Of a stretch of 64,000 nt of DNA, positions 1,488-40,840 are shown piece by piece. The stretch is taken from the NCBI RefSeq assembly GCF_002571385.2, contig NW_019218159.1, positions 151,990-215,989 on the forward strand. The letters are read 5' to 3'. The stretch's first letter is position 1, and every line of letters starts with the position of its first letter. Source of the DNA: Stylophora pistillata (Eukaryota). A model generated the notes under the pieces. It saw only the letters and a list, made by a program, of their open reading frames with translations. It was not told the origin of the DNA and searched no databases. The position numbers and the translations under genes were made by a program.

Positions 1488-1578
1488 CATGACAGTTGCT
1501 GTCATATTTACAAGCTGAGGTCGCATCATGAAGCATAAAACAGTGTAGAATCCACCAGACTAGAAGTTTGGTTTCCAT
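1488..1578 (-). CDS. First coding exon of a secreted or type I membrane protein (signal peptide plus start of a Cys-rich domain); the gene probably continues left of the window
   Basis: Not in the ORF track. ACAATGG Kozak context; translates METKLLVWWILHCFMLHDATSACKYDSNCH; followed by a consensus donor G|GTGAGT at 1488/1487 (phase 1). Confidence 0.65.
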
Positions 1579-2002
1579 TGTCGTTTAAAACTCGGTAGGT
1601 TGTCAGTCAGTGTATCCTTACGGCCAAATTGAACTGTTTCTCGTCAGTCAGGCTGGTAGTATTCAGTTAACGCGGCAATATTTTTGGCTTAATATCTGTC
1701 TTAATGTCTTAATGTCTTAATGTCTGGCTTAATATCTGGTCGGATCTTAGCTGATGCAAATCTGCAATATTGGTTTTCAGAATTGCTGATATCAATTTCG
1801 GTGGCATTTTGGATTGATTTTCATCCACCGAGCAAAGAAATGTACTTCAGCATTTCAAGTTGAGAATATTTACAGACTGGAATACCTTTGACGCTCAAGC
1901 AAAAACAGAACAGAACCTGGCAATAAGTAGAACTTTCCTTTCCATTCTCATAAGGTATTTAGGTAGGTTCCTTCATATGTATATAAAATAAGGGAGCAAG
2001 GA

Positions 2003-2013
2003 GGGAAAATCCC
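2003..2013. promoter_or_regulatory. Candidate NF-kB/Rel site GGGAAAATCCC
   Basis: Near-palindromic kB-like consensus about 425 bp upstream of the minus-strand ATG at 1578. Motif match only. Confidence 0.25.
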
Positions 2014-2807
2014 GGACGCTGGGTGTAATATATTGATTCCAATTGAGTTATTTCTAGATTAAAAGGGGTATTTTGCAAAGGCCTATTTGAGGGTACAGAA
2101 GACAACTGCCCACTGACCTACGTTTCAGTTTCTAACACGGGTCATACGCTCACAGAAACAGGTCGGAGGGTTTTCTTTTTCCCTAAGCAAAGGCAACGCG
2201 AAAGGGAAAGCCACATGGAAAATCAGTGGAAACAAGATTTCATGACAACTGTTTGCATTAGCGAAATGTGAAGCTTGCATCCTTTAGAGATTCACAGATG
2301 CATGAATATAATCTTAATAAAAGTATCAAAAACTACACTCGGTAAAATATGCTCTCTAATTGTCCCTCTTCAAAGGAAATACTTCCGGTCTTCACAGACA
2401 AAAACTTTTGGCTTCTTGAAATTCAAAAGTTGTTTATAATAATTTAGGATAACCTCCTCTTTTCAAAGAAGTCTCATGGTACACATGTAAACAGTTTCCT
2501 TTGAATAGTGCATTATATACGGAAAATTAAAACCCACTATTTCCGTGACAAATGGATGTAAGACAAATTAAACTACCGCCAAGTTATTTGCTTGCGTTAT
2601 TTACAGTTGCACCAGAGGTACAAAATATCTCAGCAAAACCCCTTACGGCCTCCTTCTCCAGGCCCTCGGTAGGTTAAAACCAGTGACAGAGCGGAGAAAA
2701 CAAGAAACAGCGATTGGGGTTGTCAGGGAAACGGCTGCATGATCACCCGCCCGCTTTTTCGCTTGTTTCCGCTGACCGAGACCCTTCTTTAATTTAAAAT
2801 TTAAAAT

Positions 2808-3194
2808 TTAAATATACGTGGTGACATGGTGATGATGTGACGGTGTTCTTGAATGAAGAGCCTCCTGTGAAGCTCTCATTACTTCTTCATAACTTGGCGG
2901 AGGTGCTACTGTCTCATCTTCGACTTCAATGTACGATTGAGGGGCACTATCTGCGGTGGGATCATAAATTTGATCAAACGCTTCTTCATGTTGCCATGGC
3001 TCGTTCACTGAGTTCATTTCTATCCTATCCACCTGTCCATTTAATTGGATGTCTGTTTCCCTTGGAATCCTATCCGTATTGACAGTTCTTTGTGTTGTGT
3101 TGGCGTTTATGTTATCATTTTCTTCGGCTTCCTCCATTAGTTTTATGCAATGGCAAACAAAAAGTATAAAAGCTAATGCGCCGAAAGCTCCCAT
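2808..3194 (-). CDS. Single-pass membrane PY-motif protein A (128 aa from first ATG; signal anchor, VCHC, PQSY...PPPSYEEV, C-terminal TTYI)
   Basis: The ORF-track start at 3308 is GTG; the first ATG is at 3194 (MGAFGALAFILFVCHCIK). Acidic tail with no Lys after the juxtamembrane K; PY module at the end. Confidence 0.75.
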   Translation of the reverse strand: MGAFGALAFILFVCHCIKLMEEAEENDNINANTTQRTVNTDRIPRETDIQLNGQVDRIEMNSVNEPWQHEEAFDQIYDPTADSAPQSYIEVEDETVAPPPSYEEVMRASQEALHSRTPSHHHHVTTYI

Positions 3195-3247
3195 CGAATA
3201 CAAAAATGATTTGCTCGACCAAATGGAAGAATTGTTCCCGTTGTTTC

Positions 3248-3393
3248 CTGAAAGAATAGAAGGAAGATTAAAGCAGTTGTAGAAAAAGAGCTTGAAAAAG
3301 GAATTCACCTTTGAACGGGACTCGAACCTTGAATTGTTCTGCGAATGAAGCCAAATGGATGCTGGTCAATATTTAATAAACGAGTTTTATATA
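3248..3393 (-). promoter_or_regulatory. Putative TATA box (3385-3393) and 61-nt 5'-UTR intron (3308-3248) of gene A
   Basis: Minus strand shows TATATAAAA, donor AAG|GTGAAT at 3308 and a pyrimidine tract ending TTCTTTCAG| at 3248. Confidence 0.4.
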
Positions 3394-5342
3394 TCTTCAG
3401 TTCCCCTTCACGTAACATTCTGTAGTGCATAAATTTAAGTTCAATTCTCACCGGGATCAAGCGTCTAAAACACAACTGTTTGGGGATAAGCAGCTGAAGC
3501 CTGCTAAAAGATCACTTTACCCGGCAATTGTTTTGGGTCAAAACACGGTACTTCTCCTCGTTCAAAAGTTGAGGTAAAACAGCGAAGTGGCCAGTAATAG
3601 TCTTGTGGCACGACTCCTGCTTTTATGCTGATTTTCACGCTTCTCATACACCATCCACAAAAGCGCGTTTTTGCTCAAAAACTCGCTATTTAACTACTCT
3701 TTGACGCGTTCTTGCATAGACTCAACCATTCAATGCACGTATGTAGTCGAGGCTTCAATTCAGTCACTTTCTTCCCGGCATATCTAGCGTATCGAAAGAG
3801 CATGACTAAATTGCCATTATTTTTTTGTTAACAACGAGCGTTACAACCGGCAAGTAAAGTCCGCATTCGTCTTCAGTAATCAGCAGTTCTATCTATGCTT
3901 ATTCCACCCTGGAATTATGGGGGAAATCAGACAAATCAACCTTAATTAAACTTATTTTTTTCGAGTAGAAGGCCGGTTTATCCGGATGGAATACGAATAC
4001 TAAAGAGTCGTAAGTCCTTGGTGGACTACAATCGTCGATTTCGATACACACGTTGAGGCAAGAATCACGGATATAAGAACATGTAAACCTCTGTTTTGAT
4101 AATCACTGAAACGAAACTCACCAGTACAATGGCTTGGAATACCCGTCTGACACCCTGAAGACGCATACTTGTGCGTGAAGAAGTACAGAATCTGAAAAAA
4201 TAGAATTTTTGATCTCATTATCATGTAACCTTCTGAGTACGTCTATATCAGCATACCTCTAAGGAAAAATAGCACTCTGCATTCATTCCGTTAGCTTCAA
4301 AGTCTTCCCTCAACTGAACGTCAGCAATATTAACTGTTCAGAATACTTTTCAGGAAATTTTCGGTCATTACGCATTTGAATATTGGCTTCAGATCTAGAG
4401 CTACCCTTATCTACATGTTTTCCTTATAGTCCTCGGCGCGTTGACGTTCACCTTGTAATTTACATTTTTTTAACTGGAAGGAATCCCTTTTATGCTTTGT
4501 TGCTTAAAAAAAGAAAAGAGGACAGAATCTGATAAATTGGGGCTTTACTTTCCATTCCCCTTACGTAGAAGGGATGACATAGTAGATAAAAGTACAAAAA
4601 GTCCTATATTTGTACCTCGCGATTTTTCCTTATATCATGGTAATCTAACTGACCCTTGATCTAATTTATGTACAGTAAAAGCGGTTGCTTAATCGATATT
4701 GAATCTTTACGAAAATTTAGAATTGGAACTGCAAATGGAGGTTCAAGTGGCGGAGAATGCCTGTCGGCTGAAAGATGATCGTAATTTGAAGGAAAAGTAC
4801 TTATAACTGACTGACCGAAGACTGAAACGGGGATTTACTGACAGACTAACAAGCTGTCTGATTGATTGACTGATCTACTGACTGATTGATAAATTGAGAG
4901 ATTTATATTTTCCTCCCAAAACCTTGTGTTGATAAAACTTTCATTTCTCCTACAAACAGGTCTCAAGAAGTTTTCTGGCATATTTTTTTCCAAAGCACTC
5001 GTGACTGTTACGTTCCACGGTTACTCCAATTCAAAGCACTCGACGACAGCTAAGACCAGATGTGACAAAAGCAGCGGACAAAGCGTACCGCGCTAGATTG
5101 CGTGACTGAAGTGAGTTGCGTGATGTCTCATTCACATCGCGCACACAGCTTCGGGACTTCAGTCGTAACGAAAATTTTCACTTTGAGGAAAGTTGTCACT
5201 ACCATCATCAGTTGAGTGTGGCGCGGACAAAGTTTGGTGTCGAGGTTTTGACCGTGAAATAAAGGTCTTCTCACGGGCAACCTTCCTCGTTTCCAATGGT
5301 TACCGAATCTAAAATGCCGTGCGTCAACCATCAAACGAGAAA

Positions 5343-5442
5343 TCCATTCACTGTAACGAAGGACTAACGCTCGAAAAGTCAGCTATAAAACACTTTACGA
5401 TGGCCAATTTACACCATGAACTCAGTGGACAGAACCAAAATT
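5343..5442 (+). mobile_element. Penelope-like element terminal fragment with degenerate minimal hammerhead and 16-bp TSD
   Basis: CTGTAACGAAGGACTAACGCTCGAAAAGTCAGC resembles the copy at 52740-52773 and shares its downstream sequence. ACCATCAAACGAGAAA is duplicated at 5327-5342 and 5443-5458. Confidence 0.7.
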
Positions 5443-5881
5443 ACCATCAAACGAGAAAGTCTGCTAAGAGAATGATTCAAACACATTGCCCCTGGAAACA
5501 GAGCTAGATGCCGTGACAACAACACGATTTTAAGTTCAAAACGTCAAACTTCCGTCGCGCCACAATCGGCTGAAATTCGTAGTAAAAACTAATCTTGGCT
5601 TTGTTTTTTCACAACCACATGCATACAATCTATATAAATATTAACATAAAATTGTTATAAAATACTCTCTTCGTTGAATGGTTTTCCCCGTTCAAAGATT
5701 ATATTCCCAAATCTATAAAATACGCAAAAATTGGCATAAATAATCCGCTTCAAGTTTTTCGATAGTGTGAATGCGTAAGTTCTTGACAGGGGTAGAAATG
5801 ACACTGGACTGCTTTAGCTCAATGTTTCCGAAACTGAAAACAAGTAGCCCCTGTTCATTTATGTTTATGCGAGATTTTAAG

Positions 5882-6313
5882 TCATGTCCCGGCCAAATTC
5901 TCATTAGAAAGCCTCAGGGCCTCCTCATAGCTCGGTGGAGGCAATTCATCCGTTGCTAAACATCTGTACGACGGCGGACCGCAATCTGCAATAGCATCAG
6001 GGCTCATCGGGAATACAGGAACACTTTCCTCGACTTGATCTTCAGCTGAATGCGACGTCGGCTCTTCGCGAGCAGCGGCGGCGGCGGCGGTTGAGTTAGA
6101 ATTTCCAGCAGCCCCCTGTAATCCAAATACGTATACGGGACTTGTGCCCCTGGTTTGGTTCGCATGAGTCCCAGCCGCTTGCTGCTGTACGCTAAGATTG
6201 GCAGCACGCTCTTGTTCTCTTCGCTTTAACGAAGCAAAATGGCAACAAAATCCAATGACAATGGCGACCACAAGAACCAAAACAATGACCAAAACTTGGC
6301 CGACATCCGCCAT
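5882..6313 (-). CDS. Single-pass membrane PY-motif protein B (143 aa; TM-GFCCH-KRR, PPSY...PPPSYEEA)
   Basis: First ATG at 6313 (track start is GTG). TM VLVIVLVLVVAIVIGF; clear paralogue of 9771-10169. Confidence 0.85.
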   Translation of the reverse strand: MADVGQVLVIVLVLVVAIVIGFCCHFASLKRREQERAANLSVQQQAAGTHANQTRGTSPVYVFGLQGAAGNSNSTAAAAAAREEPTSHSAEDQVEESVPVFPMSPDAIADCGPPSYRCLATDELPPPSYEEALRLSNENLAGT

Positions 6314-6721
6314 CCCGAATTGAAGTTTAGAGCGAACTCTTCGAGGGCACACTTTGAGAACAAATCCCGAGATGCAGGGTGGACATCTTCAAATATTTTC
6401 AAATCCCTTCGAAAGCGTTTTATCACAAAACAGCTGGTCCACTAACTCTAGTGAATCCTTTGCCTGCCAATCTAGTCTCTTGCATGGACGGTTAGTCACT
6501 CAAAGAATTCAATGTTTTTTTCTAGTTGTTGTTGATACAAACTTAAGCAGCAGTTTAAGAGTCCAGTGCATATATTTTTCAGTTTCTAGGGCCGTCTCAC
6601 AGCCAATCGCAACTGGTTCGAAATTGATCTGTAAGCCGCCATTTTCAATACGAAGGTCTCATTCGTAAATTATGCAAATACTTATGTAAATGATGGTCGT
6701 GCGAATATTAATAATCAGAGT

Positions 6722-7977
6722 GAATGTCAGACAATTCGCCCCTTGGACAATTAGCCCCAGACGATTAGCCCCCAGTCTCAGTAAATGTAAAGGAGAAGTT
6801 ACGTCTATCTTTTGGTCATTGACTTTAATGAGTTTGTGGCTCCTAAAGGAGGTTTTTTTTTTGTGAATGGTTATCTTTACTAAAATTTACTTAATTTTTA
6901 CTTAATTTAATTTACATGGGTTGCACGAGGTGAGCACAGGCCTCCAGAAGTTTTTTTGAGTTCCTTTGGCCGTCTTCATATTGAATCCAGAGGTCGAAGA
7001 GTCTTATCTACATTGTTCGTTAGGTTGACCGCTGATGTCTCTTCTGCTTTTTGTCTGAAACCAGACGGATCTGCATGTTCACCAATGTAGCTTCCCGATG
7101 AAGTACCTGGATCAGGATGTACAGGGGCAGCTGTGATCAGTTGTTGCTGAATAAGCTAATATGAGTATCCACAATTGAAGGATCCCTTTTGTACACATCC
7201 CGAGGATCAAGATTTTTACTTCGAACGAAACACGCCATTTGATTGGAGAAATGTTAATTTAAGAAAACAGTAAGCACTGAATTGGGATGAATGAAATGTC
7301 TCACGTCAAATTTACAGAAGTTCGCACATTGCGCGTGGGTTTGAAATAAACAATGAAATACCAATTAGTAAAAGTTCGCGCATTTTGCGAGGCTTTGAAA
7401 TTAACAACAAGGAATAAAATTACGCACCTTGCGCATGGGTTTGAAATAAGCAAACAAGAATGAGTAAACGTTCGCACATTGCGCATGGGTTTTCAATAAA
7501 CAAATAAATAATAATCAGTAAAAGTTCGCACAATGCGCGTGGCGAGTTTGAAATAAACCCCCATTGACATTAACAAGTAGTCGCCAATAAGTTAAAGTTT
7601 CGAAGTTTTGTTCCTGGTTTCTTTCCTTTCCTATTTAAGTTCTCGAAATAAACAACATGACGAAGAAACATTCGTAAAATATGTAAACAGAAGGAACACA
7701 GTTCACTTTTGTAAAATATACTTTATAATTCGACACGCACGGCAGAGAAACGTTCGTAAGAAGCAAATAACAAGAACATTGTTTATTTCAAAATACATGA
7801 TAGGGAAACGTTCGTAAAGTAAACACCAAGAGCATAGTTTATTTCAAGGATGGTGGTTTGGAGGCTAATAGTCCAGAGACTGGGGGCTAATAGTCCAGAT
7901 ACAGGGGGCTAATCGTCCAAAGACTGGGGGCCAATCGTCTGGGACTAATTGTCCAGGGGGCGAGTTGTCCGGATACC
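6722..7977. mobile_element. Non-autonomous DNA transposon with repetitive TIRs and 8-bp TSD (superfamily uncertain)
   Basis: GACAATTCGCCCCTTGGACAATTAGCCCCAGACGATT is inverted at the right end. TSD ATCAGAGT at 6714-6721 and 7978-7985. Internal repeats of GTTCGCACATTGCGC at about 7320-7560. Confidence 0.8.
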
Positions 7978-9770
7978 ATCAGAGTTAATCATTGTAATAG
8001 AAGTTTCTTGGTTATAAGGCGCACTCAGTTATAAGACGCATCCCAAACTTAGCACCTTAGTCAAGCCAAGTTCCCAAACTGAAGATTACGTGAAAATACT
8101 CGGTTATAAGACGCACCAAAAGATTGAGAGTGTGATGGAACTGGGAAAGTTTCACGGTTGCTCTGGCGGTAAAAGCAAATTGCGAAAAACTCCCACCAGA
8201 AGTTATATTCAAAGGTGTTCGACAGCAGAATATCAACACGCCGCCGTGGATGCAAGTTTCAGCGCGCAAAAAAGGCTGGATGGACGAAGAAGGTAGGTTT
8301 TATCTCCACATTGTTTATTCAGATAAGGAACTAACCTAGCGGGCGACCCAAACACGATTCTAGAAATTTGAAACGAGGCTTGGACAATTGTTTTGTTCCC
8401 ATTAATATCATGTTACGGAGCAGTTTTAAGCACGTATGCAAATTTCCGTTTTGTTTGCTTTTCTATGAAAGTTAATAAGTGTTCTAAAAGCAGTATTCCT
8501 TTTTAATTCATAGGAATAAAGGAGTGGATTCTACACAATCTTCGCTACACCTCAAACCAAAAAGCTCTGCTCGTTGGGATTCGTTTCGTGGTCATTTCAC
8601 CGAGGCCGTATAAGAAACGGTCCTTTCAGAACCACTACAATGGCTCTTTTCAGAGCCACCCCGGTTCATTTCAGAACCAACAGATCTGAAAAAAGTCAAT
8701 GACCGTCAATTAGTGTCCTTTTCTTGTCTTTTTAACTGCAAGTTCTGCTAAAAGTATGATCTCAAGATCTGTTGCGCAAAAATACTTGGCTATAAGACGC
8801 ACCCCAATTTCAGCACTAACTTTCCACCCGAAGACAGAATTTTCTTTAAAAAAAACCATTCGCGGTATAGCCGAGAAACTACGGGTAATGACTTTTCGAA
8901 ACTACGTCATTACAAGCGTTAAAACCAGGTGGCAAGTTCAGTTGCAGTTCTCTTCTTACCAATTTATTATTTAACTAAAATAAATACTCACAGTTACGCA
9001 GAAATGTCAAAATTTTTCCACCTTCTCCGTTGTCACAATAGGTTATAGCAAAAAAACTGAAAATCAAAGCGAAGACGGGACGAGATGTTTTGACAAAATA
9101 CTACTGGGTTTGTCGGACGTTACAGCCAGAACGACTCTCTCGTAGCGAAAAGGTTTTTATTGCGCTACGACAAGAGAGACGAGACCAGCTAGACCCGCGG
9201 GTTTCAAGCTAGCGAGCGATGCGAGCGTGCGAGGCGTGTGAGTTCTGACGCGAATACGTTTCGTGCCAGACTCCTCACAGCTAGACCTCTGGCACGCTCG
9301 CTTCAGTTCTTGTCAGCTCGAATCTTGTGCACTTACGACAAAGCGTTAGCGAGACCTGTTCGAAGACTACTGTACGTTTTTGTCTCTTTCCCACTGGAGA
9401 CACTAAATCAGAAGCACTTCAATTTTTTTCCAACCTTTGACAGCGACTAGAAAGATTAACAACCGCTTTGGATAAATTATATCGGACTGTCTATGGAATT
9501 CATGGTTTAGTACCCACTACAACTTTACAGTCACGAAATCAAATTACTGATTTGGATTCGATTACATTTGTTCGATGTCCGAACAGAACTGAATAAATGA
9601 AATGATCTTATGAAACGTTACGTGTTCGATAACGTTCGATTCCCAAATGCAATCGATTCACTGAATCGCCGACGTTGAATATTTTGTTCTATTACCAATG
9701 CTAGTCGTTATTTGTGAACAATTCTACCCGTACTGTCCTTGTCACATGGCTGAATTCTCTTAAGAAATTC

Positions 9771-10169
9771 TCACGGCTTCCTCATAGCTTCCTCATAGCT
9801 TGGTGGTGGAGGTTCATTTGAAACGGCTATGTACGGTGGGGGGCCACTGTCTGCAATAGCATCAGGGCTTCTTAGACTTTCGTCGTGATCTTGATTAACA
9901 TCTTCTTCAACTCTTGGGCTCCTCCGTTGATGAGCAGTTCCAGTTGAGTCTGAAGTTGAACTAGCTCCTCGAAGTCCAAATATGTAAACGGAACCTGTCT
10001 CGCTTTGGTTTGCATAACCAGAAGGTTGAGCTACAACTTGTTGCGTGGCCCTTCGCCTCGCGACTTCCCCTCTCCGCTTCTGAGCAATTCTGTGACAACA
10101 ACATCCAACTGTGATGGCGAAAAGCAGGATAAACAAAACGATGAAGAGAGTTTGAAAGAGTTCAGACAT
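9771..10169 (-). CDS. Single-pass membrane PY-motif protein C (132 aa; TM-GCCCH-KRR, PPPY...PPPPSYEEA)
   Basis: ATG start and hydrophobic signal anchor. Shares ANQ...VY[VI]FGL.GA and SPDAIAD.GPP.Y blocks with protein B. Confidence 0.88.
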   Translation of the reverse strand: MSELFQTLFIVLFILLFAITVGCCCHRIAQKRRGEVARRRATQQVVAQPSGYANQSETGSVYIFGLRGASSTSDSTGTAHQRRSPRVEEDVNQDHDESLRSPDAIADSGPPPYIAVSNEPPPPSYEEAMRKP

Positions 10170-11079
10170 ACCGGAATAGGGTCAACAGCACAATCAACAA
10201 CAGAATCGAAAGGAACAAAGTCCTTCTCGTAAAAAATTCAACCGGATCCTTGAAGATGTCTGTTCCGATCTTGACTTATCTTTTCACCGGCGAAGTACAT
10301 TAATATCATAAATAGCTATCCGAGCATAACTTATCGTTCCTTGAGATTGAGATTCTTGAAAGAAGTCACTAGCAGGATTTACTCCATCTTTTGGTGGGGT
10401 CCCTAAGTAAGAACAGCCTTGTTTTGCAGAGAGTTCTTTCTGCTGACCGCCATTTTTATTTAGACTCAGCTGGTCACGCAACCTCACCGATCCCGATCTG
10501 CATCTTCCGCGACCAATGGACATTTACATGCTTATTACAACTACACCCAACAGACAGCTGCTAGTTTTTGTCCGCCTGTAGACAGAAGCAAACTCTATTT
10601 TAAGTGTACACCATCCCTATCACCAATATAATTATATCTAATTTCATGAATTTAATTACTTAGTCCGTGTTTAGGTAAGCCCTTTTTCATCCAAACCACC
10701 GAAATTTATCACCTAGTAACTACATTATAACAGATAAAATACGCAGAAATGACGTTGACAATTTTTAAATTGTGTTTCCGTAATTTGGCGATGTTTTTTT
10801 AAAGCCTCCTTTTCTCTTCATTTTCCCCAGAGCGAACGCATCAAAATTGGTGCAATTTGGTTAAGGCAAATTGCATCGCAAGGGAATAGGGAAGAAAGAG
10901 ATGATAAAAGTATTCATTACACGACTCGGGCAGTCAGAGGGCCAATAACTAAAATCAACCAATCAAAATGCTCTATTGCCGGTCAATATTCGCTCAGTAT
11001 TGGACCGGGCACTGTCCCGAATGGTCCCGAATGATACCGCACTTGTGTCCTTTTGAACTTCAGTCGTATAATAAATCTC

Positions 11080-11221
11080 TTATTAACCAAGCTTGCTCGG
11101 GACCGTACTGGAAGAATATCGGCCTTCGGTCTTTTTTGTACGGTCCTCGCTGCGCTCGGTCGGTACTGTCAAGACCTTGGGCCGATATTCTCCCGGTACG
11201 GCCCTCGCGCTTGGTTAATAA
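11080..11221. repeat. Palindromic MITE-like unit within a composite repeat (about 10920-11600)
   Basis: TTATTAACCAAGC...GCTTGGTTAATAA with internal inverted AGAATATCGGCC/GGCCGATATTCT; a related copy follows from about 11272. Confidence 0.6.
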
Positions 11222-11619
11222 GATATATGAATAGTGAGAACAAACTCTGAAACTTGACGAATAGTAACTTCTTACTAAACAAGCGCGAGGGCCTTATGGG
11301 AATTATCAGCCCAAGATCATAGCAGTACGGACCGAGCACAGCGAGGTCCTTACAAAAATGATATTCCATACAAACACAATATTTCCTCCGTTAGGCTCGA
11401 GCAAGTGAGGCAAGTAAGTAGTTTATCATGTGGCATTCGGACTGAACTTGGTTATTTTGAATTTACCGGCTTTCAAGAACAAACATTAACGGCGTATGAA
11501 CGTTTCCATGGAAAAGGTCCGTATGACTAAATCCCGACCATGTAATATAAGAACAAATCAGAACGCGCAGATTTACCTCAAGACTTCCTTACCAAATAAT
11601 AATGTGCGATATCTTGACT

Positions 11620-12260
11620 TTTTGGACAGATCACTCACCACTCCAGCCCAAACCCCTGTTATCGTTGAGCGCTCATTTACGATCAGCAGGTCAAGTCAAG
11701 AGCTTTGTTCGATTAGTGTTTCAGTCACGATCACAATAAGCAGAAGCTCAGTTAAGAGTAACCTAGTTTTTTTAATGTCAACTTTTAATGCAGGAAATCA
11801 ACTAACATGGCGCTGTGAAAGGCTTGTACAGATCGGTATTGCCATGTTTATAAAGTTCGGCTCTACTCCGGCCGAATTGAGTGTCCAAAATGTATTAAAT
11901 GTGCATATTTCAATCATGAAATTCTCTATTCTACAAGAACTTTGTGTAATATGCAAACTGTATCGTGAAAAATTGTGTACATTCACTACTTGTTAATGTA
12001 ATTATGAATTCTTTAAAACTGCTGTCTTAAAATGTGACTGTTTAAGGATCACACTTTTCTCTGGAGACCTTCTTCCAATAAAAATATCCTTCCGGCGTAA
12101 CAGAACAACACAACCACGTGCGTATCCACGTCGCCATGATCTGCATACTTGTTCGACGATTTGTCCACAGGTTACAATCGCTTGATGACAGAAAAATCTG
12201 TGTTGTTCAACCAGCGGCGTTTCACAAACAGTCAGATTTATTTTGCTAGAGTAACAAGCC
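11620..12260 (-). mobile_element. Highly degenerate LINE (CR1/L2-type) AP-endonuclease fragment
   Basis: Broken frames give RRGYARGCVVLL and SS*LDLLIVN...GV...SD, resembling APE-domain motifs. Confidence 0.35.
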
Positions 12261-12660
12261 TGCAAATTACGGCCCTAAGGGCTAAAACAGACACTTGTTT
12301 CTAAATTTGCCCTCTTGTTGTCAAGATGACAGCCTAGAGAATAAGCCAGAGACATTTTTGTGGTTTTCATTGAGCTCTAGGCAGCTTTAAGCGGTCAAGT
12401 ATCAAGGGAAGATGATAATCCGGTTCTTTTCGATATTTCACTAAAATCATGACCACAGCGCTGTTTTCTCTAGACATAAGACTGACAATCTAACGGAACA
12501 GCTAGTTTCATTCCACGCTTGAGGTTCCTTTTAGGCCGTTCGCTTTTGGCGCCCATGTCACACATTCTGTGACCAGTTGTCTAAAGTCAGCCACGCTTTA
12601 GCACATTCCGTTGTCGCGCGCGCGGCCCCTTGACTCCTTAGCAGTTGAGATTCCTTACTA

Positions 12661-13011
12661 TCATGAACTCGACTGCGAAGAAACTTGCGTTAGATCTGCT
12701 AAAGCGCCTTGTCCGGGATGCTCGTGCCTACGAACAACTCTTGACATCCTCGATGGATCCCTTGGCCACAATCTGTGGCAGAGGAACCCGACTAACATGA
12801 GCAGCAACACGAGTAATACCAACACAACACCGAGAACTAACCAGTTATACAGCTTGTGTTTTTCAGTCAGCTCACAAGCTTCACAAGCCGCTTTTTCTGT
12901 GGCATTTTCCGCGCATAAAGCGAAGGAAAGCATCCATGAACTGAACCCCTCAGCCACAAACATCCACACCGTGAGACGCTTCCATCCCGTGACAATAACG
13001 CGTGCGTCCAT
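12661..13011 (-). CDS. Type I membrane protein D (116 aa; putative signal, CxxC ectodomain, TM-GFLCHR, short tail without PY motifs)
   Basis: AAAAATGG start; TM WLVLGVVLVLLVLLLMLVGFL; juxtamembrane G-x-x-C-H as in B and C; ends in consecutive TGA TAG TAA. Confidence 0.65.
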   Translation of the reverse strand: MDARVIVTGWKRLTVWMFVAEGFSSWMLSFALCAENATEKAACEACELTEKHKLYNWLVLGVVLVLLVLLLMLVGFLCHRLWPRDPSRMSRVVRRHEHPGQGALADLTQVSSQSSS

Positions 13012-15331: not shown

Positions 15332-16165
15332 TCATAATCCAGAGGAACTTTCCCCAGTGTTCGACACTGCTACCTTTAAGACATCTTCGTAGCTTGGCGG
15401 GCTGGGCGAGTTTCCGTACCGCTGATCGCTGTACGGAGGAGGGTCCTCGTTCGTGTTTTGAGTATCGGGAGGAGGTTCGTGGGATTCTTCGAAATCTTCG
15501 CCATCGTCCGATCTGGGCTGAGGTTTGTCGTATGCCGAGTTAAAATCGTAAGGCGGTAAGTGCGCGTGAGGGACATAACAGCCGTTTAAAACTGCATCCA
15601 AGTCTCCATTCAGTGCAAAATTCTCAATTCCCATGTTTGATTCAGCTTGCGACGCATCGTGTCCAGTCAAGTGACGTTCGTTCCAATAATCATCCCCTGT
15701 TTGTGAACCCTGTGTCGTTGCTGAGCGGTTCCGTCGATTTCGCCTTTGTTTTGCACGGGCCAGGCAAAATGAAATCAAGCAAAAGTTTATAAATAGAATT
15801 GAAAATCCCACGAGAGCGATAGCAAATTCTTGGTTTCCTGAGAGCAAACTGTGGCTCGTGGAAGTTAGTTCCGCAGTAGTCTCCACTACTGTTATATATT
15901 TCATGGTCGCGTCCGTCGACGGATTCTGACTTTCTTTACTGTCCGACATTGATTCAACGTAAACACAATTTCCTTGTCGACAAACCTTGCCAGACCCACA
16001 GGAAATGTTTAAACGATCGCAGTCAATAATTTCGACAACTCGACTGTTGTTTTTCCGCGTAGTGTTTTCGCAATTGCTCGATGGAGGCGGACAATCTACA
16101 AAACTTATCGCTAGCTTTGCTTCAAAGGAAATCACCAAAAACAGCACCAAATTCACCGACGTCAT
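15332..16165 (-). CDS. Type I membrane PY-motif protein E (277 aa; signal peptide, 6-Cys ectodomain, S/T stalk, TM, LPPY/PPPY/PPSYEDV)
   Basis: First ATG at 16165 (track start is GTG). Signal MTSVNLVLFLVISFEAKLAIS; CDRLNISCGSGKVCRQGNC; TM FAIALVGFSILFINFCLISFCL followed by a basic cluster. Confidence 0.88.
   Translation of the reverse strand: MTSVNLVLFLVISFEAKLAISFVDCPPPSSNCENTTRKNNSRVVEIIDCDRLNISCGSGKVCRQGNCVYVESMSDSKESQNPSTDATMKYITVVETTAELTSTSHSLLSGNQEFAIALVGFSILFINFCLISFCLARAKQRRNRRNRSATTQGSQTGDDYWNERHLTGHDASQAESNMGIENFALNGDLDAVLNGCYVPHAHLPPYDFNSAYDKPQPRSDDGEDFEESHEPPPDTQNTNEDPPPYSDQRYGNSPSPPSYEDVLKVAVSNTGESSSGL

Positions 16166-18215: not shown

Positions 18216-18246
<31 letters not shown>
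17320..18246 (+). mobile_element. 5'-truncated R4/Dong-clade non-LTR retrotransposon (zinc knuckle plus restriction-like endonuclease), frameshifted
   Basis: CRICGQFQETIDYLVSGC, ILWD..IQTD...ANRPDIVV, K..KY.DL; ends in a (TAA)n tail. Confidence 0.85.
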
Positions 18247-18248
<2 letters not shown>

Positions 18249-19830: not shown

Positions 19831-19832
19831 TG

Positions 19833-19863
19833 NNNNNNNNNNNNNNNNNNNNNNNNNNNNNNN
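19833..19863. other. Assembly gap (31 N)
   Basis: Run of N; a single N also occurs at 18520. Confidence 0.99.
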
Positions 19864-23188: not shown

Positions 23189-23770
23189 TTAACCAGCGGT
23201 AGTGATAACAGTAGTTCCTGTTTCTGAATGCTGTAGTAACTGTGAAATCTTCACCACATGCTCGTAAGGAGGGGGAGAGCTTCCGAACAAGATACCATAC
23301 TCTGGTGGTTGTTCATTAGCAGTTTCGGTCCCTACGTTTTCTTCTATGACCGTGCTTTGCATCTCGCCAATACCGTTTAAACTGAAGCTAAAAAGACTAA
23401 AATAAGGCGGAGGACCAGCAGTCATACTCAGAGACGAAAATCGCCGTCGCATTAAATACTCGGGAATTTCCACAGCCGTGCTTGAATCGCATGTGGTGTT
23501 CTCGTTCGATGGTGCGTCGACATTCTGAGACCAAGGTCCTTGTTTGAGGCACACGTAGACCAAAACGATAACCAGTCCAATAATTAATGCCACAGATATA
23601 CTCATAATGATGACGATGATTTCCACTCCGCTACCTGACATATTTGAGGTTTCACATTTGTCGCTACATAGTCCCTGAGAGCACGATTCCAATTCCCCAT
23701 TACACTGCGATGACACACCGATAACGCATGAAACTAAAAACATCGCCATACAAAAACCGAAAAGTTTCAT
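23189..23770 (-). CDS. Type I membrane PY-motif protein F (193 aa; signal peptide, 4-Cys mini-ectodomain, TM, PPPY/PPEY/PPPYEHV)
   Basis: ATG start; signal MKLFGFCMAMFLVSCVIGVSS; C-x6-C-x4-C-x3-C; TM IIVIIMSISVALIIGLVIVLVYVCL; three PPxY motifs. WBP1/VOPP1/Shisa-like architecture. Confidence 0.9.
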   Translation of the reverse strand: MKLFGFCMAMFLVSCVIGVSSQCNGELESCSQGLCSDKCETSNMSGSGVEIIVIIMSISVALIIGLVIVLVYVCLKQGPWSQNVDAPSNENTTCDSSTAVEIPEYLMRRRFSSLSMTAGPPPYFSLFSFSLNGIGEMQSTVIEENVGTETANEQPPEYGILFGSSPPPYEHVVKISQLLQHSETGTTVITTAG

Positions 23771-31794: not shown

Positions 31795-33165
31795 TTAAGT
31801 ATCGGCGCCTGATTTCATCTTTGTATCTTCCCGCGCCCACCACTCCACCCACCAGACTCGTCCCAGCATAACGTTTCTCTTTCGGCCAGGATGCGCCGCG
31901 CTGGCCGGGGTCGAGCGATAGGACGGTAACGCTTCAAAATTCTTTGGGAAAGGCGTCTCATGACGTACTTCTTTCACATAAAAGCTTGAAAACGGCCACC
32001 GAAGGTCCTGTGCTTTGTTTTCGTCCAAATTTGAGGCCAGGTTATCTTCTCGGTGGCTTTCCGTCGGAGGATTTCTGGTATCTTCCGATTGATTAACGAT
32101 TGGGTCTTGTATGGAACCGATCTTACCTTCATCGGGCATGAAACATTTATAAACGGTACGATATTCGTTTGTGTTGGATGAATCTCCGTTTGGATGAATT
32201 ATAAGCCCACCGTCCATAAGTTCTTGAATCTCAGGGTCCACATCTCGTGCCATCTCAAAGCTGCCAGCCCCACTGGAGCCATCATCGTCATTACTTTCGT
32301 CGCTGGATTCCGAAGAAGAACCGTCGCCATTCGGCGGTCGTTCGTTTCCCGTACCCTTCATGGATCCGTTGTCGGAATCGGCTAGCTCATCTGATCGTTC
32401 TCGCTTTATTTTTCTCATTGCCTTACGAACGGCATTTTTTAATGCTTTTTCCGAATTGTTGCTTCCGTGTCCGTCCGATTCGCTGTCACTTCCGTTGTCG
32501 CGTCTACAGATTTTCCTGATATGCGCCTCAAAATCAAACTCGTCTTCGGTTTCTTCTTCCGATGATTCTTCGTCAGACAAAATGGGGGACTCAGTCTCCA
32601 AGTTTTCACCTATGGAACTCCCAGAGTCGCTACTAGCCTCTTTGTACTGTTGCAAAATGGAAGCCACAACCTTCTTCAAATGAGCGCTTGTTTCAGTGTC
32701 CATCGGATCTACATGACGCTCTTCTTCCTTAGCAGCCTGTTTCCTGCTCTGAGCAAGCTTATCCTCCTTTATTTCTACCTGAATCTGCTGCATGTTCATT
32801 GAGGGATTCCTGAAACTAGCAAGGAGCCGAACGGTTTGTTCTTGTAAGGAGATGGAGTCCCACACTTCACTGTCAACGTCCAGCAACCCTACAGAGCTTG
32901 TCAAACCATTCTCGTGTGCTTCGAACGCAGAACGAGTTCCAACCGAGCTCTGTCTCGACAACTGGTGGCTCCTAGTATCGTCAGATCCTCCAGGGGAGGC
33001 TATACTGCAAGCAGAACCGATGCTCCCCCTGGGATAGGAGTTGTAAGATCCCGCGCGATTTCTTGGACTGTTTTTACCCGCTGATGATTCATTTTCATCC
33101 GAACTCACCATGTAAGCTCCTTCTTTGCCTTTGCTCCAGAAACGTTTGCGTCTAAAAATGGACAT
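31795..33165 (-). CDS. Uncharacterised 456-aa acidic, largely disordered protein with uninterrupted CDS
   Basis: 1371-nt ATG ORF, more GC-rich than its flanks. Upstream acceptor TTGTTCTCTTTCAG| at 33265 suggests a 5'-UTR intron. No TM segment; LPSY and a Trp-rich motif near the C-terminus. Confidence 0.8.
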   Translation of the reverse strand: MSIFRRKRFWSKGKEGAYMVSSDENESSAGKNSPRNRAGSYNSYPRGSIGSACSIASPGGSDDTRSHQLSRQSSVGTRSAFEAHENGLTSSVGLLDVDSEVWDSISLQEQTVRLLASFRNPSMNMQQIQVEIKEDKLAQSRKQAAKEEERHVDPMDTETSAHLKKVVASILQQYKEASSDSGSSIGENLETESPILSDEESSEEETEDEFDFEAHIRKICRRDNGSDSESDGHGSNNSEKALKNAVRKAMRKIKRERSDELADSDNGSMKGTGNERPPNGDGSSSESSDESNDDDGSSGAGSFEMARDVDPEIQELMDGGLIIHPNGDSSNTNEYRTVYKCFMPDEGKIGSIQDPIVNQSEDTRNPPTESHREDNLASNLDENKAQDLRWPFSSFYVKEVRHETPFPKNFEALPSYRSTPASAAHPGRKRNVMLGRVWWVEWWAREDTKMKSGADT

Positions 33166-38943: not shown

Positions 38944-39521
38944 TAGGCCCTTATCGATTGTGCTAGTAAACGTAACATATTATGCTACTAGCAGTGCCCG
39001 ATTTTTTCTAAATTATGCCTAAAATTATGCTCGTTTTTGAACATTGTGCTACTTAATACTTTTTCTTAATGATCATGTATGCTTAAGAATAAAGAACACA
39101 AAACTGGTCCAAAATCAAAATTATATGTATTCATGTCATTTATTGTTAATAAAGCGTCATATTTTCTTAATCTAGAGTTACACACTTGCTCTGATAAGAC
39201 ACAACTAGACACTGCACTTCATTCCAGACTAGAAGCTATGTTAGCGGAACTGGGACCGAAGCAATCTTTACTTCCGGTGTGCTCAGTCCTCTTCACGGCC
39301 AACGACGCAGTATTGCGGTAACCTTACTCCCCTCCCCCAGGCGAATGAAAATGGACTGAAACATGGACAGAACAAATCATGACTCTGGTAATGTTCCCTT
39401 CACTGAAAACTAAAAATATGCCGATTACGCTGGCAGTGCTACTTTTAAAGAAAGAGCACAAATTATGTTCGTTTTTCCAAATTATACCAAAACTTATGCT
39501 AGCACAATCGATAAGGGCATA
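38944..39521. mobile_element. hAT-type MITE
   Basis: TIRs TAGGCCCTTATCGATTGTGCTAG / CTAGCACAATCGATAAGGGCATA; 8-bp TSD ACTAGGAT at 38936-38943 and 39522-39529. Confidence 0.85.
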
Positions 39522-40387
39522 ACTAGGATACATGTGGCTACAATACGCCATGAAAACAAACCGCGGCGACGATTCACTTTGTGTGACGATGAGGATTTTG
39601 TTGAAAATCTTTTGTCTCCGTAGCAGAATTTTGTATACGCAACAGATCGCATAGACTCAGTCTGGCTTGAATATTTACCATGATTTCAGTTATACTTAGT
39701 CGCGGCGACTTGATATACATGTAAAGCTATTTGTCGGAGATAACTAATTGCCTGAGGCCTTGAAGGTTCGTCCTTATAGCGATTTGTAAGTCACGCAATG
39801 ACAGACTGGAGAAACTTTTATTTCATTAAAGAAGCTTGGTACAATGGAACAAAATAAAATTCATACGTTTCCACATAAGCTTCAGAGTGTTTTCCTGTTT
39901 TTGTTTCCTTCTTTCACAATCATTTGCTCCTAATATGACCGCGCTATTTTGAATATTTCAAACTGTCATAAAAATTAGACCATGTTGTCTCCTTTGTGTA
40001 CGAAAATGTCATGGGAACATTTTACCTAAACAATATCAGCCTCTTGCAATCACGCGAAGTAGAAGTGTGTTGTAAAAAATATTTGACTTGTCATCATGAT
40101 ATGTTAATGTCCTGACTTCCTTCACACTTCACTTCTTTCACTCTTCTCTGATCAGATAGAAGCCCTTTGCTCCTCAATTTCGCTTCACCAATGGTTCGTC
40201 GCTTCAATAAAAATTTACAAATAACCTCTTTAAACTGAAGACCAGGCCATACTATTTTCTTGAAATAATTTAAGCATTGATCGATAGACACAAAACTATA
40301 TACATATCTTGCTAGTAAAATGTTTTTGTAGATGAATATAGCTCCTCGTGCTCTCGGTAAAAATTCTCTTGCACCGCTTGTTAATTC

Positions 40388-40840
40388 TCACTGTGCACTC
40401 ACCACGACATCTTCGTATTTAGGCGGTGGACAATAAAACAAAGAACTGTATGAAGGTGGGGGCATTTCCACACTATACGAGTCTTGATCGCTTGTCGTAG
40501 TTTGATTTGTGCTTCCGCGAACCAGTGTTCCATCGTAGGAAGAGGAAATAATTCTTATGGCGCTATTCGAGTTTGGAAGCATCCAGTCCTCAATTCGGCG
40601 ATCTTGTAGTCCATTAGAAAATTCCTCCACAACAGTTGTGGTAGAAATTGCTCCTTGATTACTAGTGTTACTGTCGAACTCGCTGTTTCGTCGGTACGTT
40701 CCAGATTCGACACTGTTTTGTTTACTTTTCAAACAGCTGAAGAGGCGCTTACGAAAAAAGCACGCCATAATCACTAATGCAGCCAACAGCAAGCCAATAG
40801 GTACGGGCCAAATACAGTTAAAAATCGGAGACAGCCGCAT
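40388..40840 (-). CDS. Single-pass membrane PY-motif protein G (150 aa from first ATG; TM-CFFRKR, PPPSYSSLF...PPPKYEDV)
   Basis: First ATG at 40840 (track start is TTG). TM IWPVPIGLLLAALVIMACFF; S/T/N-rich tail; double PY. Confidence 0.8.
   Translation of the reverse strand: MRLSPIFNCIWPVPIGLLLAALVIMACFFRKRLFSCLKSKQNSVESGTYRRNSEFDSNTSNQGAISTTTVVEEFSNGLQDRRIEDWMLPNSNSAIRIISSSYDGTLVRGSTNQTTTSDQDSYSVEMPPPSYSSLFYCPPPKYEDVVVSAQ

What the first reader, a model, noticed from the sequence alone, without database searches (positions are those of the whole stretch)
1488..40840. Co-oriented cluster of at least 7 divergent single-pass membrane genes, six ending in a double PY module: candidate expanded NEDD4-adaptor system
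Seen: genes A (2808), B (5882), C (9771), D (12661), E (15332), F (23189) and G (40388) are all on the minus strand, each with an uninterrupted CDS and one TM followed by Cys and basic residues. Six end in PPxYE[EDH][VA]. Apart from B/C they are not alignable by eye, and their N-termini range from no ectodomain (A, B, C, G) to 2-, 4- and 6-Cys ectodomains (D, F, E). Known: TM plus PPxY defines WBP1/WBP1L, VOPP1, PMEPA1/LDLRAD4, PRRG and Shisa-like proteins, many of which recruit WW-domain HECT E3s (NEDD4/ITCH/WWP/SMURF). As I recall, these are mostly dispersed multi-exon genes. Inference: a lineage-specific tandem array with variable recognition ends and a constant ubiquitin-ligase recruiting tail, possibly sorting membrane proteins to endosomes, lysosomes or the symbiosome, or tuning immune signalling. 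I cannot confirm that it is undescribed.
Basis: partly seen in the sequence, partly recalled or inferred. Interest (0 to 1): 0.85.

Follow-up and report, generated by a model that had tools for sequence, protein, structure and literature searches.

The report
Coral array of PY-tailed membrane proteins
A stony-coral genome segment carries an ancient, same-direction row of small one-pass membrane protein genes whose tails keep invariant PPxY motifs; some are stripped-down WBP1-family members, so they probably dock NEDD4-type ubiquitin ligases at membranes, but no binding or function has been tested.

Summary
Seven minus-strand ORFs (A-G) each encode one transmembrane (TM) helix followed by Cys and basic residues, and six end in PPxYE[EDH][VA]. 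Two corrections apply: gene A is spliced, with a signal peptide and two Cys on an upstream exon, and its first PY is degenerate (PQSY).

The window (Stylophora pistillata, contig C375) holds only the upstream half of a ~97-kb array of about 18 co-oriented ORFs. The gene order is kept in Desmophyllum and Porites, so the array is ancient within stony corals and not species-specific.

A, B and C belong to a branch of Pfam WBP-1 (Shisa-like adaptors) found so far only in corals. B and C have no ectodomain and A has almost none. E, F, G and D match no Pfam family. E connects to the WBP-1-like group through a bridging relative, and F and G align along their tails. D has no PY motif.

TM segments and PY motifs are the best-conserved parts. 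A and B are transcribed. The genome encodes WW-HECT ligases.

The most likely role is membrane adaptors that recruit NEDD4-family ligases. This is inferred by analogy with WBP1L. WW binding, clients and any link to symbiosis are untested. I rate it a new variant of a known kind, of moderate interest.

The parts
2808..3247 (-). Gene A, exon 2 (coding). It encodes N-glycosylation sites, the TM helix, juxtamembrane Cys-x-Cys, an acidic linker, a degenerate PQSY and the final PPPSYEEV motif. The stop codon is at 2808-2810. The transcript 3' end lies near 2270.
   Evidence: ORF. RNA contigs cover 2273-3246 and are joined to 4121 and beyond in runs X1, X2 and X14. The acceptor reads ..TTTCAG|G. The tail aligns with B, C and coral WBP-1-family proteins.
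3248..4121 (-). Gene A intron (874 nt, GT..AG on the minus strand, phase 1).
   Evidence: The joint 3246/4121 (cut +1) is seen in polyA RNA contigs of three studies. Splice-site letters were read.
4122..4224 (-). Gene A, coding part of exon 1. It holds the ATG at 4224, a signal-peptide-like hydrophobic start and a two-Cys stub of an ectodomain. The exon itself runs upstream to at least 5384 and so overlaps B's 3'UTR.
   Evidence: In-phase translation of exon 1 is open from an ATG preceded by a stop. Contig pieces cover 4121-5384. No Pfam match was found for the exon alone.
5882..6313 (-). Gene B coding sequence (143 aa). It has no ectodomain: six residues, then the TM helix, CC, KRRE, a poly-Ala stretch and a double PY tail (PPSY .. 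PPPSYEEAL). The mRNA runs from about 6855 to 4528, with a polyA tail at 4528.
   Evidence: ORF. A colinear RNA contig covers 4528-6651 and ends in a T-run. Stranded raw reads of X24 cover 4500-6700. In-frame 3- and 6-nt indels occur at 6075. The exact 143-aa product stands on many transcript-sized contigs. B is 45% identical to the Desmophyllum orthologue.
9771..10169 (-). Gene C coding sequence (132 aa). It is a paralogue of B with no ectodomain: TM helix, CCC, basic run, then PPPY .. PPPSYEEAM.
   Evidence: ORF with a stop codon just upstream of the ATG. It is 44-48% identical to B. Its weak WBP-1 Pfam hit scores 19.3 bits, below the cut-off. The tree places it in its own clade beside the B clade.
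12661..13011 (-). Gene D coding sequence (116 aa). It has a signal peptide, a 2-Cys (CxxC) ectodomain with an N-glycosylation site, a TM helix, Cys-His-Arg and a short Ser-rich tail without any PY motif.
   Evidence: ORF. There is no PPxY in any frame nearby. Orthologues sit in the same position in Desmophyllum (63% identity, same stop) and Porites (52%). The exact product stands on transcript-sized contigs. It has no family.
15332..16165 (-). Gene E coding sequence (277 aa from the ATG used by its orthologues). It has a signal peptide, a 6-Cys N-glycosylated ectodomain, a very conserved TM and juxtamembrane segment, and three invariant PY motifs (LPPYDF, PPPY, PPSYED).
   Evidence: 17 coral orthologues; conservation by region. 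The AlphaFold2 model gives a TM helix at pLDDT about 90 and a disordered tail. The gene is single-copy in the genome. It has no Pfam family.
23189..23770 (-). Gene F coding sequence (193 aa). It has a signal peptide, a 4-Cys ectodomain, a TM helix, CLKQGPW, an invariant IPEYLxRRRFSSLS block and three invariant PY motifs (PPPYFSLF, PPEYGILF, PPPYEHV).
   Evidence: (19 coral orthologues). The gene is single-copy. It has no Pfam family. Its tail aligns with G.
40388..40840 (-). Gene G coding sequence (150 aa from ATG 40840). It has no signal peptide and no ectodomain, an N-terminal TM helix, Cys and a basic run, then PPPSYSSLF .. PPPKYEDVV at the C-terminus. It is the upstream end of the array.
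   Evidence: ORF. The Desmophyllum orthologue (L046:151-615) starts at the matching Met and is 71% identical. The gene is single-copy. No further members occur at 41-64 kb.
31795..33165 (-). An interposed conserved gene that is not a TM-PY member. It is a 456-aa acidic, Ser-rich single-ORF protein lying between F and G in both Stylophora and Desmophyllum.
   Evidence: ORF. It is 55% identical over 472 aligned positions to the 469-aa Desmophyllum neighbour of F. No significant Pfam match was found.
19833..19863 (.). Assembly gap (N run) in transposon-like DNA between E and F. It is not inside any gene of the array.
   Evidence: The F-E adjacency is independently supported by synteny.

Best explanation
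The window holds the upstream half of a ~97-kb head-to-tail array in Stylophora pistillata (contig C375:96329-192916). The array has about 18 ORFs, all on the minus strand, encoding small single-pass membrane proteins.

I read them as transmembrane adaptor proteins of the WBP-1 / Shisa-like kind. Each has a conserved TM helix with juxtamembrane cysteines, which are probable palmitoylation sites, and this places it in secretory or endocytic membranes. A disordered cytoplasmic tail displays two or three PPxY motifs. These motifs would dock the WW domains of NEDD4-family HECT ubiquitin ligases, so that the adaptor, and membrane proteins it contacts through its TM segment or ectodomain, are ubiquitinated and sorted.

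The array arose by old tandem duplications of a Cys-rich WBP-1-like ancestor, followed by strong divergence. Several copies then reduced the ectodomain (A) or lost it (B, C, G), and at least two lost the PY motifs (D and the copy at C375:133244-133930).

Shown here: the gene structures, transcription of A and B, conservation and synteny across stony corals, the family link of A, B and C, and the presence of WW-HECT genes.

Inferred: palmitoylation, WW binding, ligase recruitment, the existence and identity of clients, and common ancestry of E, F, G and D with the rest.
For: 1. Architecture and excess over chance.

2. Family link of A, B and C:
- A matches array member m09 at 75 bits and the Desmophyllum 247-aa protein at 60 bits, from the TM to the tail. 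B and C match the Desmophyllum and Porites C-like proteins, which in turn match the 247-aa protein at 59 bits.
- The 247-aa protein matches its 205-aa neighbour at 136 bits. That neighbour passes Pfam WBP-1 (36.3 bits against a cut-off of 28.1, profile positions 2-101).
- A profile of this group retrieves 56 proteins. The named ones are all from corals, and about 17 carry a precomputed WBP-1 hit, one of them a 138-aa form like the ectodomain-less B and C.

3. Links for the other genes:
- E's double-PY tail aligns to the WBP-1-like profile at probability 96.8.
- P0119, a distant relative of E, has a Cys-rich ectodomain that aligns to the ectodomain of the WBP-1-like proteins (probability 88, E = 3e-6).
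- F and G align over 69 columns (probability 91).

4. Purifying selection:
- All PY motifs are invariant in 17 E and 19 F orthologues.
- TM plus juxtamembrane identity is 0.80 in E and 0.88 in F, against 0.40 and 0.58 for the ectodomains.
- Indel polymorphisms in B are in frame.

5. Synteny:
- The order G, acidic gene, F, E, D, C, long forms, 236-aa gene, m08 is kept in Desmophyllum. The order F, E, D, C is kept in Porites.
- In at least seven further assemblies, hits for two to four of these families (E, F, C-like, long form) share the same longest-contig length.

6. Expression:
- The A and B mRNAs, spliced (A) and polyadenylated (B), are seen in polyA RNA runs of three studies. Stranded raw reads cover B.
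- Transcript-sized contigs carry B, D, E and F.

7. Partners exist: three loci combine WW and HECT matches (C595, C71, C126).

8. Mechanism by analogy: WBP1L is a palmitoylated glycoprotein whose [L/P]PxY motifs bind and activate WWP1, WWP2, ITCH and NEDD4L, and it lowers CXCR4 levels (PMC6991692). Comm and PRRG4 use an extended xPSY[DE]EAL-type motif much like the corals' PPSYEEAL (PMC5578492).

9. The tails are predicted disordered, with short helices just after the PY motifs.
Against: - No binding, ubiquitination or localisation data exist for any member.
- A, B and C themselves score below the Pfam WBP-1 cut-off (11.1, 16.1 and 19.3 bits).
- E, F, G and D hit no family. Their links to the rest rest on short proline-rich motifs, one bridging sequence of unknown species, or nothing at all (D). 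Convergence on WW-binding motifs cannot be excluded.
- PPxY also binds YAP, WWOX, MAGI and other WW proteins.
- The motifs overlap YxxPhi sorting signals and YEE[VA] sites that could be phosphorylated.
- A complex prediction with a coral WW domain could not be run.
- Expression of C and G was not examined directly.
Confidence: 0.6

Rival explanations
1. The proteins are scaffolds for WW proteins other than HECT ligases, such as YAP/Hippo components, WWOX (as for VOPP1) or MAGI/KIBRA. Two closely spaced PY motifs would bind tandem WW domains and hold signalling proteins at membranes, without ubiquitination.
For: - The two-PY spacing is fixed, with 11-14 residues between the two tyrosines.
- The genome has many WW loci that are not next to HECT matches.
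- A review held in the library covers VOPP1 and WBP1 within the WWOX network (PMC6125347, listed, not read in detail).
- PRRG4's PY motifs also bind MAGI proteins (PMC5578492).
Against: The only family member tested in depth, WBP1L, binds NEDD4-family ligases (PMC6991692). The extended motif with acidic and hydrophobic residues after the Tyr matches the Comm/PRRG4 type, which binds Nedd4 (PMC5578492). Nothing here discriminates between WW classes.
Confidence: 0.13
2. The proteins are cargo or receptors rather than adaptors. The ectodomain or TM segment senses something, and the PY motifs are simply their own degradation and endocytosis signals (PPxY degron plus YxxPhi), as in ENaC subunits.
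For: - Several motifs read PPxYxxL or PPxYxxF (F, G), which doubles as a YxxPhi signal.
- Cys-rich, N-glycosylated ectodomains are conserved in E, F and the long forms.
Against: B, C and G have no ectodomain at all, so they cannot be receptors for external ligands. The proteins are tiny and lack any signalling domain.
Confidence: 0.12
3. The proteins are palmitoylated, phosphotyrosine-based transmembrane adaptors like LAT or PAG. The YEE[VA] tyrosines would be phosphorylated and bind SH2 domains, and the prolines would be secondary.
For: They have a very short or absent ectodomain, juxtamembrane Cys clusters, and tyrosines followed by acidic then hydrophobic residues. The resemblance to Src-type SH2 sites is from my own knowledge and was not tested.
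Against: The two prolines before every Tyr are invariant across orthologues. An SH2 site does not require them.
Confidence: 0.07
4. This is not one system. Unrelated small membrane protein genes lie together by chance or for shared regulation and have acquired PY motifs independently. Only A, B and C and the Cys-rich members would form a real family.
For: - Profile comparisons of E or F with the WBP-1-like group align only the PY tail or the TM helix.
- D has no detectable relative among the others.
- An unrelated acidic gene sits inside the array.
Against: - All members share strand and architecture and are almost all single coding exons.
- The tail profile occurs nowhere else in 397.6 Mb.
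- A bridging sequence links E to the Cys-rich ectodomain family.
- F and G align well beyond the motifs.
Confidence: 0.08

Closest known systems
WBP1 / WBP1L (OPAL1) / VOPP1 / TMEM92, i.e. Pfam WBP-1 (PF11669), within the Shisa-like 'STMC6' group of single-pass adaptors
   Same: - Small single-pass proteins with juxtamembrane cysteines and a tail with two or three [L/P]PxY motifs.
- Coral relatives of A, B and C pass the Pfam model.
- WBP1L is palmitoylated, glycosylated, and binds and activates NEDD4-family ligases (PMC6991692).
   Different: - The window's own genes score below the Pfam cut-off.
- The C*C*CC*CC ectodomain is absent from B, C and G, reduced to two Cys in A, and replaced by a 12-Cys module in the long coral forms.
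- As I recall (not checked here), the vertebrate genes are dispersed and multi-exon. Here the genes form one co-oriented array of mostly single-coding-exon genes.
- The genome has a separate, better WBP-1 match elsewhere (C417).
Commissureless (insects) and PRRG4 (vertebrates)
   Same: - Short single-pass proteins, some without a signal peptide.
- They have PY motifs including an extended xPSY[DE][EQ]A[LV] motif that is essential for Comm. The coral tails end in PPSYEEAL, PPSYEEAM or PPSYEDVL.
- Comm binds Nedd4 and diverts a client receptor (Robo), in a way that depends on the Robo1 transmembrane domain (PMC5578492).
   Different: - There is no sequence homology: the Pfam Comm hit for B is 12.4 bits at E = 0.19.
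- There is no Gla or propeptide region.
- Clients are unknown.
NDFIP1/2 (Bsd2 in yeast), membrane activators and adaptors of NEDD4-family ligases
   Same: They are membrane proteins whose PPxY/LPSY motifs recruit and activate NEDD4-family ligases for ubiquitination of membrane cargo. This is established knowledge, recalled and not tested here.
   Different: NDFIPs have three TM helices and N-terminal PY motifs, whereas the coral proteins have one TM helix and C-terminal motifs. No sequence match was seen.
Shisa and CYYR1
   Same: They have a Cys-rich ectodomain, one TM helix and a proline-rich tail with PPxY. CYYR1 acts on WWP1 (PMC11399591, title and abstract only). Shisa retains Frizzled and FGF receptors (PMC5578492).
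   Different: There is no Pfam Shisa or CYYR1 hit. The fold search of the long-form model gave no Shisa match. The protein-atlas look-alikes (CYYR1, BEAN1, TMEM52B, VOPP1) all score under 0.9.

Membership tests
Pfam WBP-1 (PF11669) | The protein scores above the curated cut-off of 28.1 bits | tested here: not met
   A scores 11.1, B 16.1 and C 19.3 bits. D, E, F and G give no hit. Array members outside the window also give no hit. The six-frame search of the whole genome finds only C417:238092-238400.
Pfam WBP-1 (PF11669) | Significant sequence homology to proteins that pass the model (transitive membership) | tested here: met
   This holds for A, B and C only. The chain runs from A to Dp_247 (60 bits), from Dp_247 to Dp_205 (136 bits), and Dp_205 scores 36.3 bits on WBP-1. 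B and C join Dp_C/Pl_C, which join Dp_247 at 59 bits. About 17 of the 56 profile hits carry PF11669, including a short 138-aa form.
Shisa-like / STMC6 group | N-terminal ectodomain with six Cys in the pattern C*C*CC*CC (as quoted in PMC6991692 and PMC5578492) | tested here: not met
   B, C and G have no ectodomain. A has 2 Cys, D 2, F 4, and E 6 without CC doublets. Long coral forms have 12 Cys with one CC pair. The fold search gave no Shisa-domain match.
Shisa-like / STMC6 group | A single TM helix followed by a cytoplasmic tail with [L/P]PxY motifs | tested here: met
   Met for A, B, C, E, F and G. Not met by D, which has no PY.
NEDD4-family adaptor (functional class) | Direct binding of the PY motifs to WW domains of a HECT ligase | not testable with these tools
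   WW-HECT loci exist in the genome (C595, C71, C126). A real test needs a pull-down.
NEDD4-family adaptor (functional class) | PY motifs kept under selection in orthologues | tested here: met
   All three PY motifs are invariant in 17 E and 19 F orthologues, and both are invariant in 22 long WBP-1-like forms.
Commissureless (PF15957) / PRRG | Match to the family profile, and for PRRG a Gla domain | tested here: not met
   Only B gives a Comm hit, at 12.4 bits and E = 0.19. There is no Gla match. Only the extended PSY-acidic-hydrophobic motif is shared.
NDFIP | Three TM helices with N-terminal PY motifs | tested here: not met
   Each protein has one hydrophobic segment and C-terminal motifs.

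The most novel reading that the evidence does not exclude
Stony corals maintain a dedicated, diversified locus of 'minimal' ubiquitin-ligase adaptors. Each member would use its own strongly conserved TM segment, rather than an ectodomain, to pick a different membrane client for NEDD4-type ubiquitination. The array would thus act as a combinatorial sorting system for the coral's specialised membranes, such as the symbiosome, the calcifying epithelium or immune receptors. The orphan families E, F/G and D would be extreme divergents of WBP-1 that sequence profiles no longer recognise.
Probability: 0.25. Interest if true: 0.7.

Novelty: new variant of a known kind. Interest (0 to 1): 0.45.

Why it matters
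PY-motif membrane adaptors such as WBP1L, NDFIP, Comm/PRRG4 and Shisa decide which receptors and transporters stay on a membrane. In well-studied animals, as far as I recall, they are few and scattered.

Here a whole set is kept as one ordered locus in stony corals on both main branches of the short-form tree. It ranges from Cys-rich forms to bare TM-plus-tail forms. The locus offers:
- a natural series for asking which part of such adaptors selects the client (ectodomain or TM helix);
- named candidates, now annotated only as hypothetical proteins, for the control of membrane protein turnover in coral cells, including alga-hosting and calcifying cells;
- a case showing that tandem arrays too diverged for routine duplicate detection exist in coral genomes. 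The published coral tandem-duplicate screen required E <= 1e-20 and 80% coverage (PMC10236652).

It also corrects a public gene model (PFX19118.1) that fuses F and E.

Tried and rejected
- **Pfam on all window genes and ten further members.** Nothing was significant for the window genes. Weak TMIE, MLANA, TMEM51 and poxvirus A13L hits fall on TM helices and were disregarded.
- **WBP-1 model against the whole genome in six frames.** It does not see the array.
- **Each of C, E, F and G against the whole genome.** No paralogues were found outside the array.
- **E profile against 1.84 billion representatives.** Only six hits came back, so there is no link to a named family.
- **Protein atlas for E and D.** Only look-alikes under 0.9 appeared. 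I treat them as leads, not evidence.
- **AlphaFold2 of E.** Confidence was too low outside the TM helix for a fold search.
- **AlphaFold2 of a long WBP-1-like form plus Foldseek against the PDB.** The best matches were Dkk4 N-terminal domain, Draxin, colipase-like and knottin folds at E >= 0.05, so no fold was assigned. A profile search of PDB sequences also gave nothing.
- **Complex prediction of a PY tail with a coral WW domain.** This says nothing for or against binding.
- **Apparent splice at 6778 upstream of B.** I rejected it. The 'loose' letters are a diverged haplotype of the same sequence.
- **Reads on the opposite strand at 6747-7026.** They carry many mismatches and lack splice sites, so they probably come from a repeat copy elsewhere.
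- **Gene A.** It was searched exon by exon, by reference. The joined protein was not built or sent to any tool.
- **Literature searches.** None found a description of this array.
- **The scan's own notes.** They hold nothing on this array.

Full report
**Source and gap.** The window is G000:C375:151990-215989 of a 397.6-Mb assembly. An exact-sequence look-up places gene E on a 321,408-base contig of Stylophora pistillata. There one GenBank model (PFX19118.1, 'hypothetical protein') fuses F and E. The flagged gap (19833-19863) and a single N at 18520 lie between E and F in DNA with transposon-like ORFs, one of which gives a weak zf-RVT hit. No coding sequence of the finding touches them. The F-then-E order is the same in two other corals, so the gap does not affect the finding.

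**Observation.** ORFs A (2808-3308), B (5882-6352), C (9771-10169), D (12661-13011), E (15332-16273), F (23189-23770) and G (40388-40882) are all on the minus strand.
- Six end in PPxYE[EDH][VA]. Five have a second PPxY 11-14 residues upstream, counted from Tyr to Tyr. A has PQSY at that place.
- The PPxY DNA pattern occurs 17 times against 5.7 +/- 2.5 in shuffles. Twelve of these lie in the six tails.
- A 30-position profile of the tails, run over the whole genome in six frames, finds only these six genes, then two neighbouring array members (m10 at E = 4e-4, m09 at 0.12), and nothing else below E = 1.

**Gene models and RNA.** PolyA RNA runs from three studies hold more than half of the sampled words of 2700-12699. 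Reads and contigs were laid on 1500-7499.
- B is a colinear mRNA running from about 6855 to 4528, with a polyA tail at 4528. Stranded raw reads have the orientation expected for a minus-strand gene. In-frame 3- and 6-nt indels occur in its poly-Ala run. With a stop codon in frame upstream, B starts at ATG 6313 (143 aa) and has no ectodomain.
- A is spliced. Contigs in three runs join 4122 to 3247 across an 874-nt GT..AG intron. Translated in phase, exon 1 gives an ATG at 4224, a signal-peptide-like start and two Cys.
- A's exon 1 continues upstream to at least 5384 and so overlaps B's 3'UTR. Either A starts inside B's 3'UTR or it is made by read-through from B.
- A was handled exon by exon. 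The joined protein was not built.
- A 'loose end' at 6778 is a diverged haplotype, not a splice.
- Orthologue alignments set the start of E at 16165 and of G at 40840.
- The exact B and D products, and E and F variants, stand on many transcript-sized public contigs of 1.3-2.5 kb.
- C and G were not examined for RNA.

**The array is larger and old.** A six-frame scan of the whole contig finds TM-plus-PPxY ORFs only between C375:96329 and 192916, all on the minus strand.
- There are ten below the window (m01-m10, two of them fragments). One further PY-less Cys-rich member lies at 133244-133930.
- A 9.5-kb N run sits just before the window. It was left as it is.
- In Desmophyllum pertusum the order is G, a 177-aa gene, the acidic gene, F, E, D, a C-like gene, two long Cys-rich genes (247 and 205 aa), a 236-aa PY-less gene, and an m08 orthologue. 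In Porites lutea the order F, E, D, C-like is kept.
- In at least seven further assemblies, hits for two to four of these families (E, F, C-like, long form) report the same longest-contig length.
- A tree of the short forms puts B and C in two sister-like clades of close relatives. Both sit inside the clade that holds the Desmophyllum gene, and Porites falls on the other side. The array is therefore ancient in stony corals, and only the B/C duplication is recent.

**What the genes are.** All-against-all comparison and alignments show that A, B, C, m09 and m10 share a tail module with the two long Desmophyllum genes. The module reads roughly ..PDAIA..GPPSY..PPPSYEE.., followed by a short conserved stretch.
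- The 205-aa gene passes Pfam WBP-1 (36.3 bits). The 247-aa gene scores 18.7 bits.
- A profile of the group recovers 56 proteins. All named ones are from corals, and about 17 have a precomputed WBP-1 hit, including a short form.
- The long forms carry a 12-Cys ectodomain. One array member matches DUF7107. The predicted fold of the long-form ectodomain resembles no solved structure convincingly.
- A, B and C are therefore divergent WBP-1-family members, of a branch found so far only in corals, that reduced the ectodomain (A) or lost it (B, C).

E and F each have 17-30 coral orthologues and no Pfam family.
- The E profile finds only six proteins among 1.84 billion representatives.
- One of these, P0119, comes from a transcript contig of unknown species. 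It combines an E-like TM segment, LPPYDF and PPSYEE motifs with a Cys-rich ectodomain that aligns to the WBP-1-like ectodomain (probability 88, E = 3e-6).
- E's tail aligns to the WBP-1-like tail (probability 96.8 over 29 columns). G's tail does so at probability 80. F and G align over 69 columns (probability 91).
- E against F aligns only at the tail, at probability 22.
- D has no detectable relative and no PY motif.

One origin by tandem duplication is the simplest reading. For E, F, G and D it is not proven.

**Constraint.** In both E and F the TM plus juxtamembrane segment (0.80 and 0.88 mean pairwise identity) and the PY motifs (0.64-1.00) are the most conserved parts. Ectodomains (0.40 and 0.58) and linkers are less conserved. 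F also keeps an invariant IPEYLxRRRFSSLS block. The AlphaFold2 models give a confident TM helix, small disulfide hairpins and disordered tails with short helices right after the PY motifs.

**Mechanism.** The genome has several loci that combine WW and HECT matches. WBP1L, the characterised relative, is a palmitoylated glycoprotein whose [L/P]PxY motifs bind and activate WWP1, WWP2, ITCH and NEDD4L and lower CXCR4 levels (PMC6991692). Comm and PRRG4 use an extended xPSY-acidic-hydrophobic motif like the corals' PPSYEEAL, and Comm's action on Robo1 needs the Robo1 TM domain (PMC5578492).

I therefore rate 'membrane adaptors that recruit NEDD4-family ligases, with client choice largely in the membrane' at about 0.6. 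The rivals are other WW partners, self-degrons of cargo proteins, phosphotyrosine adaptors, and an assemblage of unrelated genes. No binding test could be run here.

**Novelty.** Literature searches and the coral tandem-duplication paper found no description of this array. That paper's thresholds would miss such diverged copies, and it mentions neither WW nor NEDD4. The proteins are annotated as hypothetical or uncharacterised. The kind of protein is known. What is new is the conserved array, the ectodomain-less forms and the orphan families E, F/G and D. I rate it a new variant of a known kind, of moderate interest.

Noticed in passing
window 1-1400: Tandem copies with a 244-nt period: the same short ORFs recur at 244-nt steps on the minus strand. 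It is not part of this finding.
   Followed up: partly
window 31795-33165 (-): A conserved 456-aa acidic, Ser-rich single-ORF gene lies inside the array between F and G. It is 55% identical to its Desmophyllum counterpart and has a conserved C-terminal LPSY and a Trp-rich stretch. It matches no Pfam family and its function is unknown.
   Followed up: partly
window 15332-23770; GenBank PFX19118.1: The public 499-aa gene model fuses F's coding sequence to the non-coding upstream part of E's ORF. Orthologues and transcript contigs show two separate genes.
   Followed up: yes
window 4121-5384 (-): Gene A's first exon overlaps the 3'UTR of gene B. In runs X1 and X2 the contig depth of A (74) exceeds that of B (38). 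In the stranded run X24, B is covered and A is not. Either B reads through into A or A has a start site inside B's 3'UTR.
   Followed up: partly
window 6075: In-frame 3-nt and 6-nt deletions are seen in reads and contigs within B's poly-Ala run. This is a length polymorphism between colonies.
   Followed up: no
window 6747-7026: Stranded reads of opposite orientation cover this stretch, with many mismatches and abrupt ends. It lies beside short GACAATTAGCCCC-like repeats. The reads probably come from a repeat copy transcribed elsewhere.
   Followed up: partly
window 16700-22000: Transposon-like ORFs lie between E and F and hold both N stretches; the ORF at 17377-17724 gives a weak zf-RVT match. 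The E-F spacing is 6.9 kb here against 5.3 kb in Desmophyllum.
   Followed up: partly
G000:C375:142472-151989 (just before the window): A 9.5-kb run of N separates gene A from array members m10 and m09, so further members could be hidden there. It was left as it is.
   Followed up: no
window 50030-50344 (-) and 50600-51037 (+): Two ORFs on opposite strands encode nearly the same peptide of about 90 aa, forming an inverted duplicate pair of unknown nature.
   Followed up: no
L019:9101-9337 (C375:141100-141336) and L020:2592-2996 (C375:114591-114995): Two tail-only fragments (m10, 51% identical to A's tail, and m06) lack a TM helix in the same ORF. They are either pseudogene remnants or second exons of spliced members like A.
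   Followed up: no
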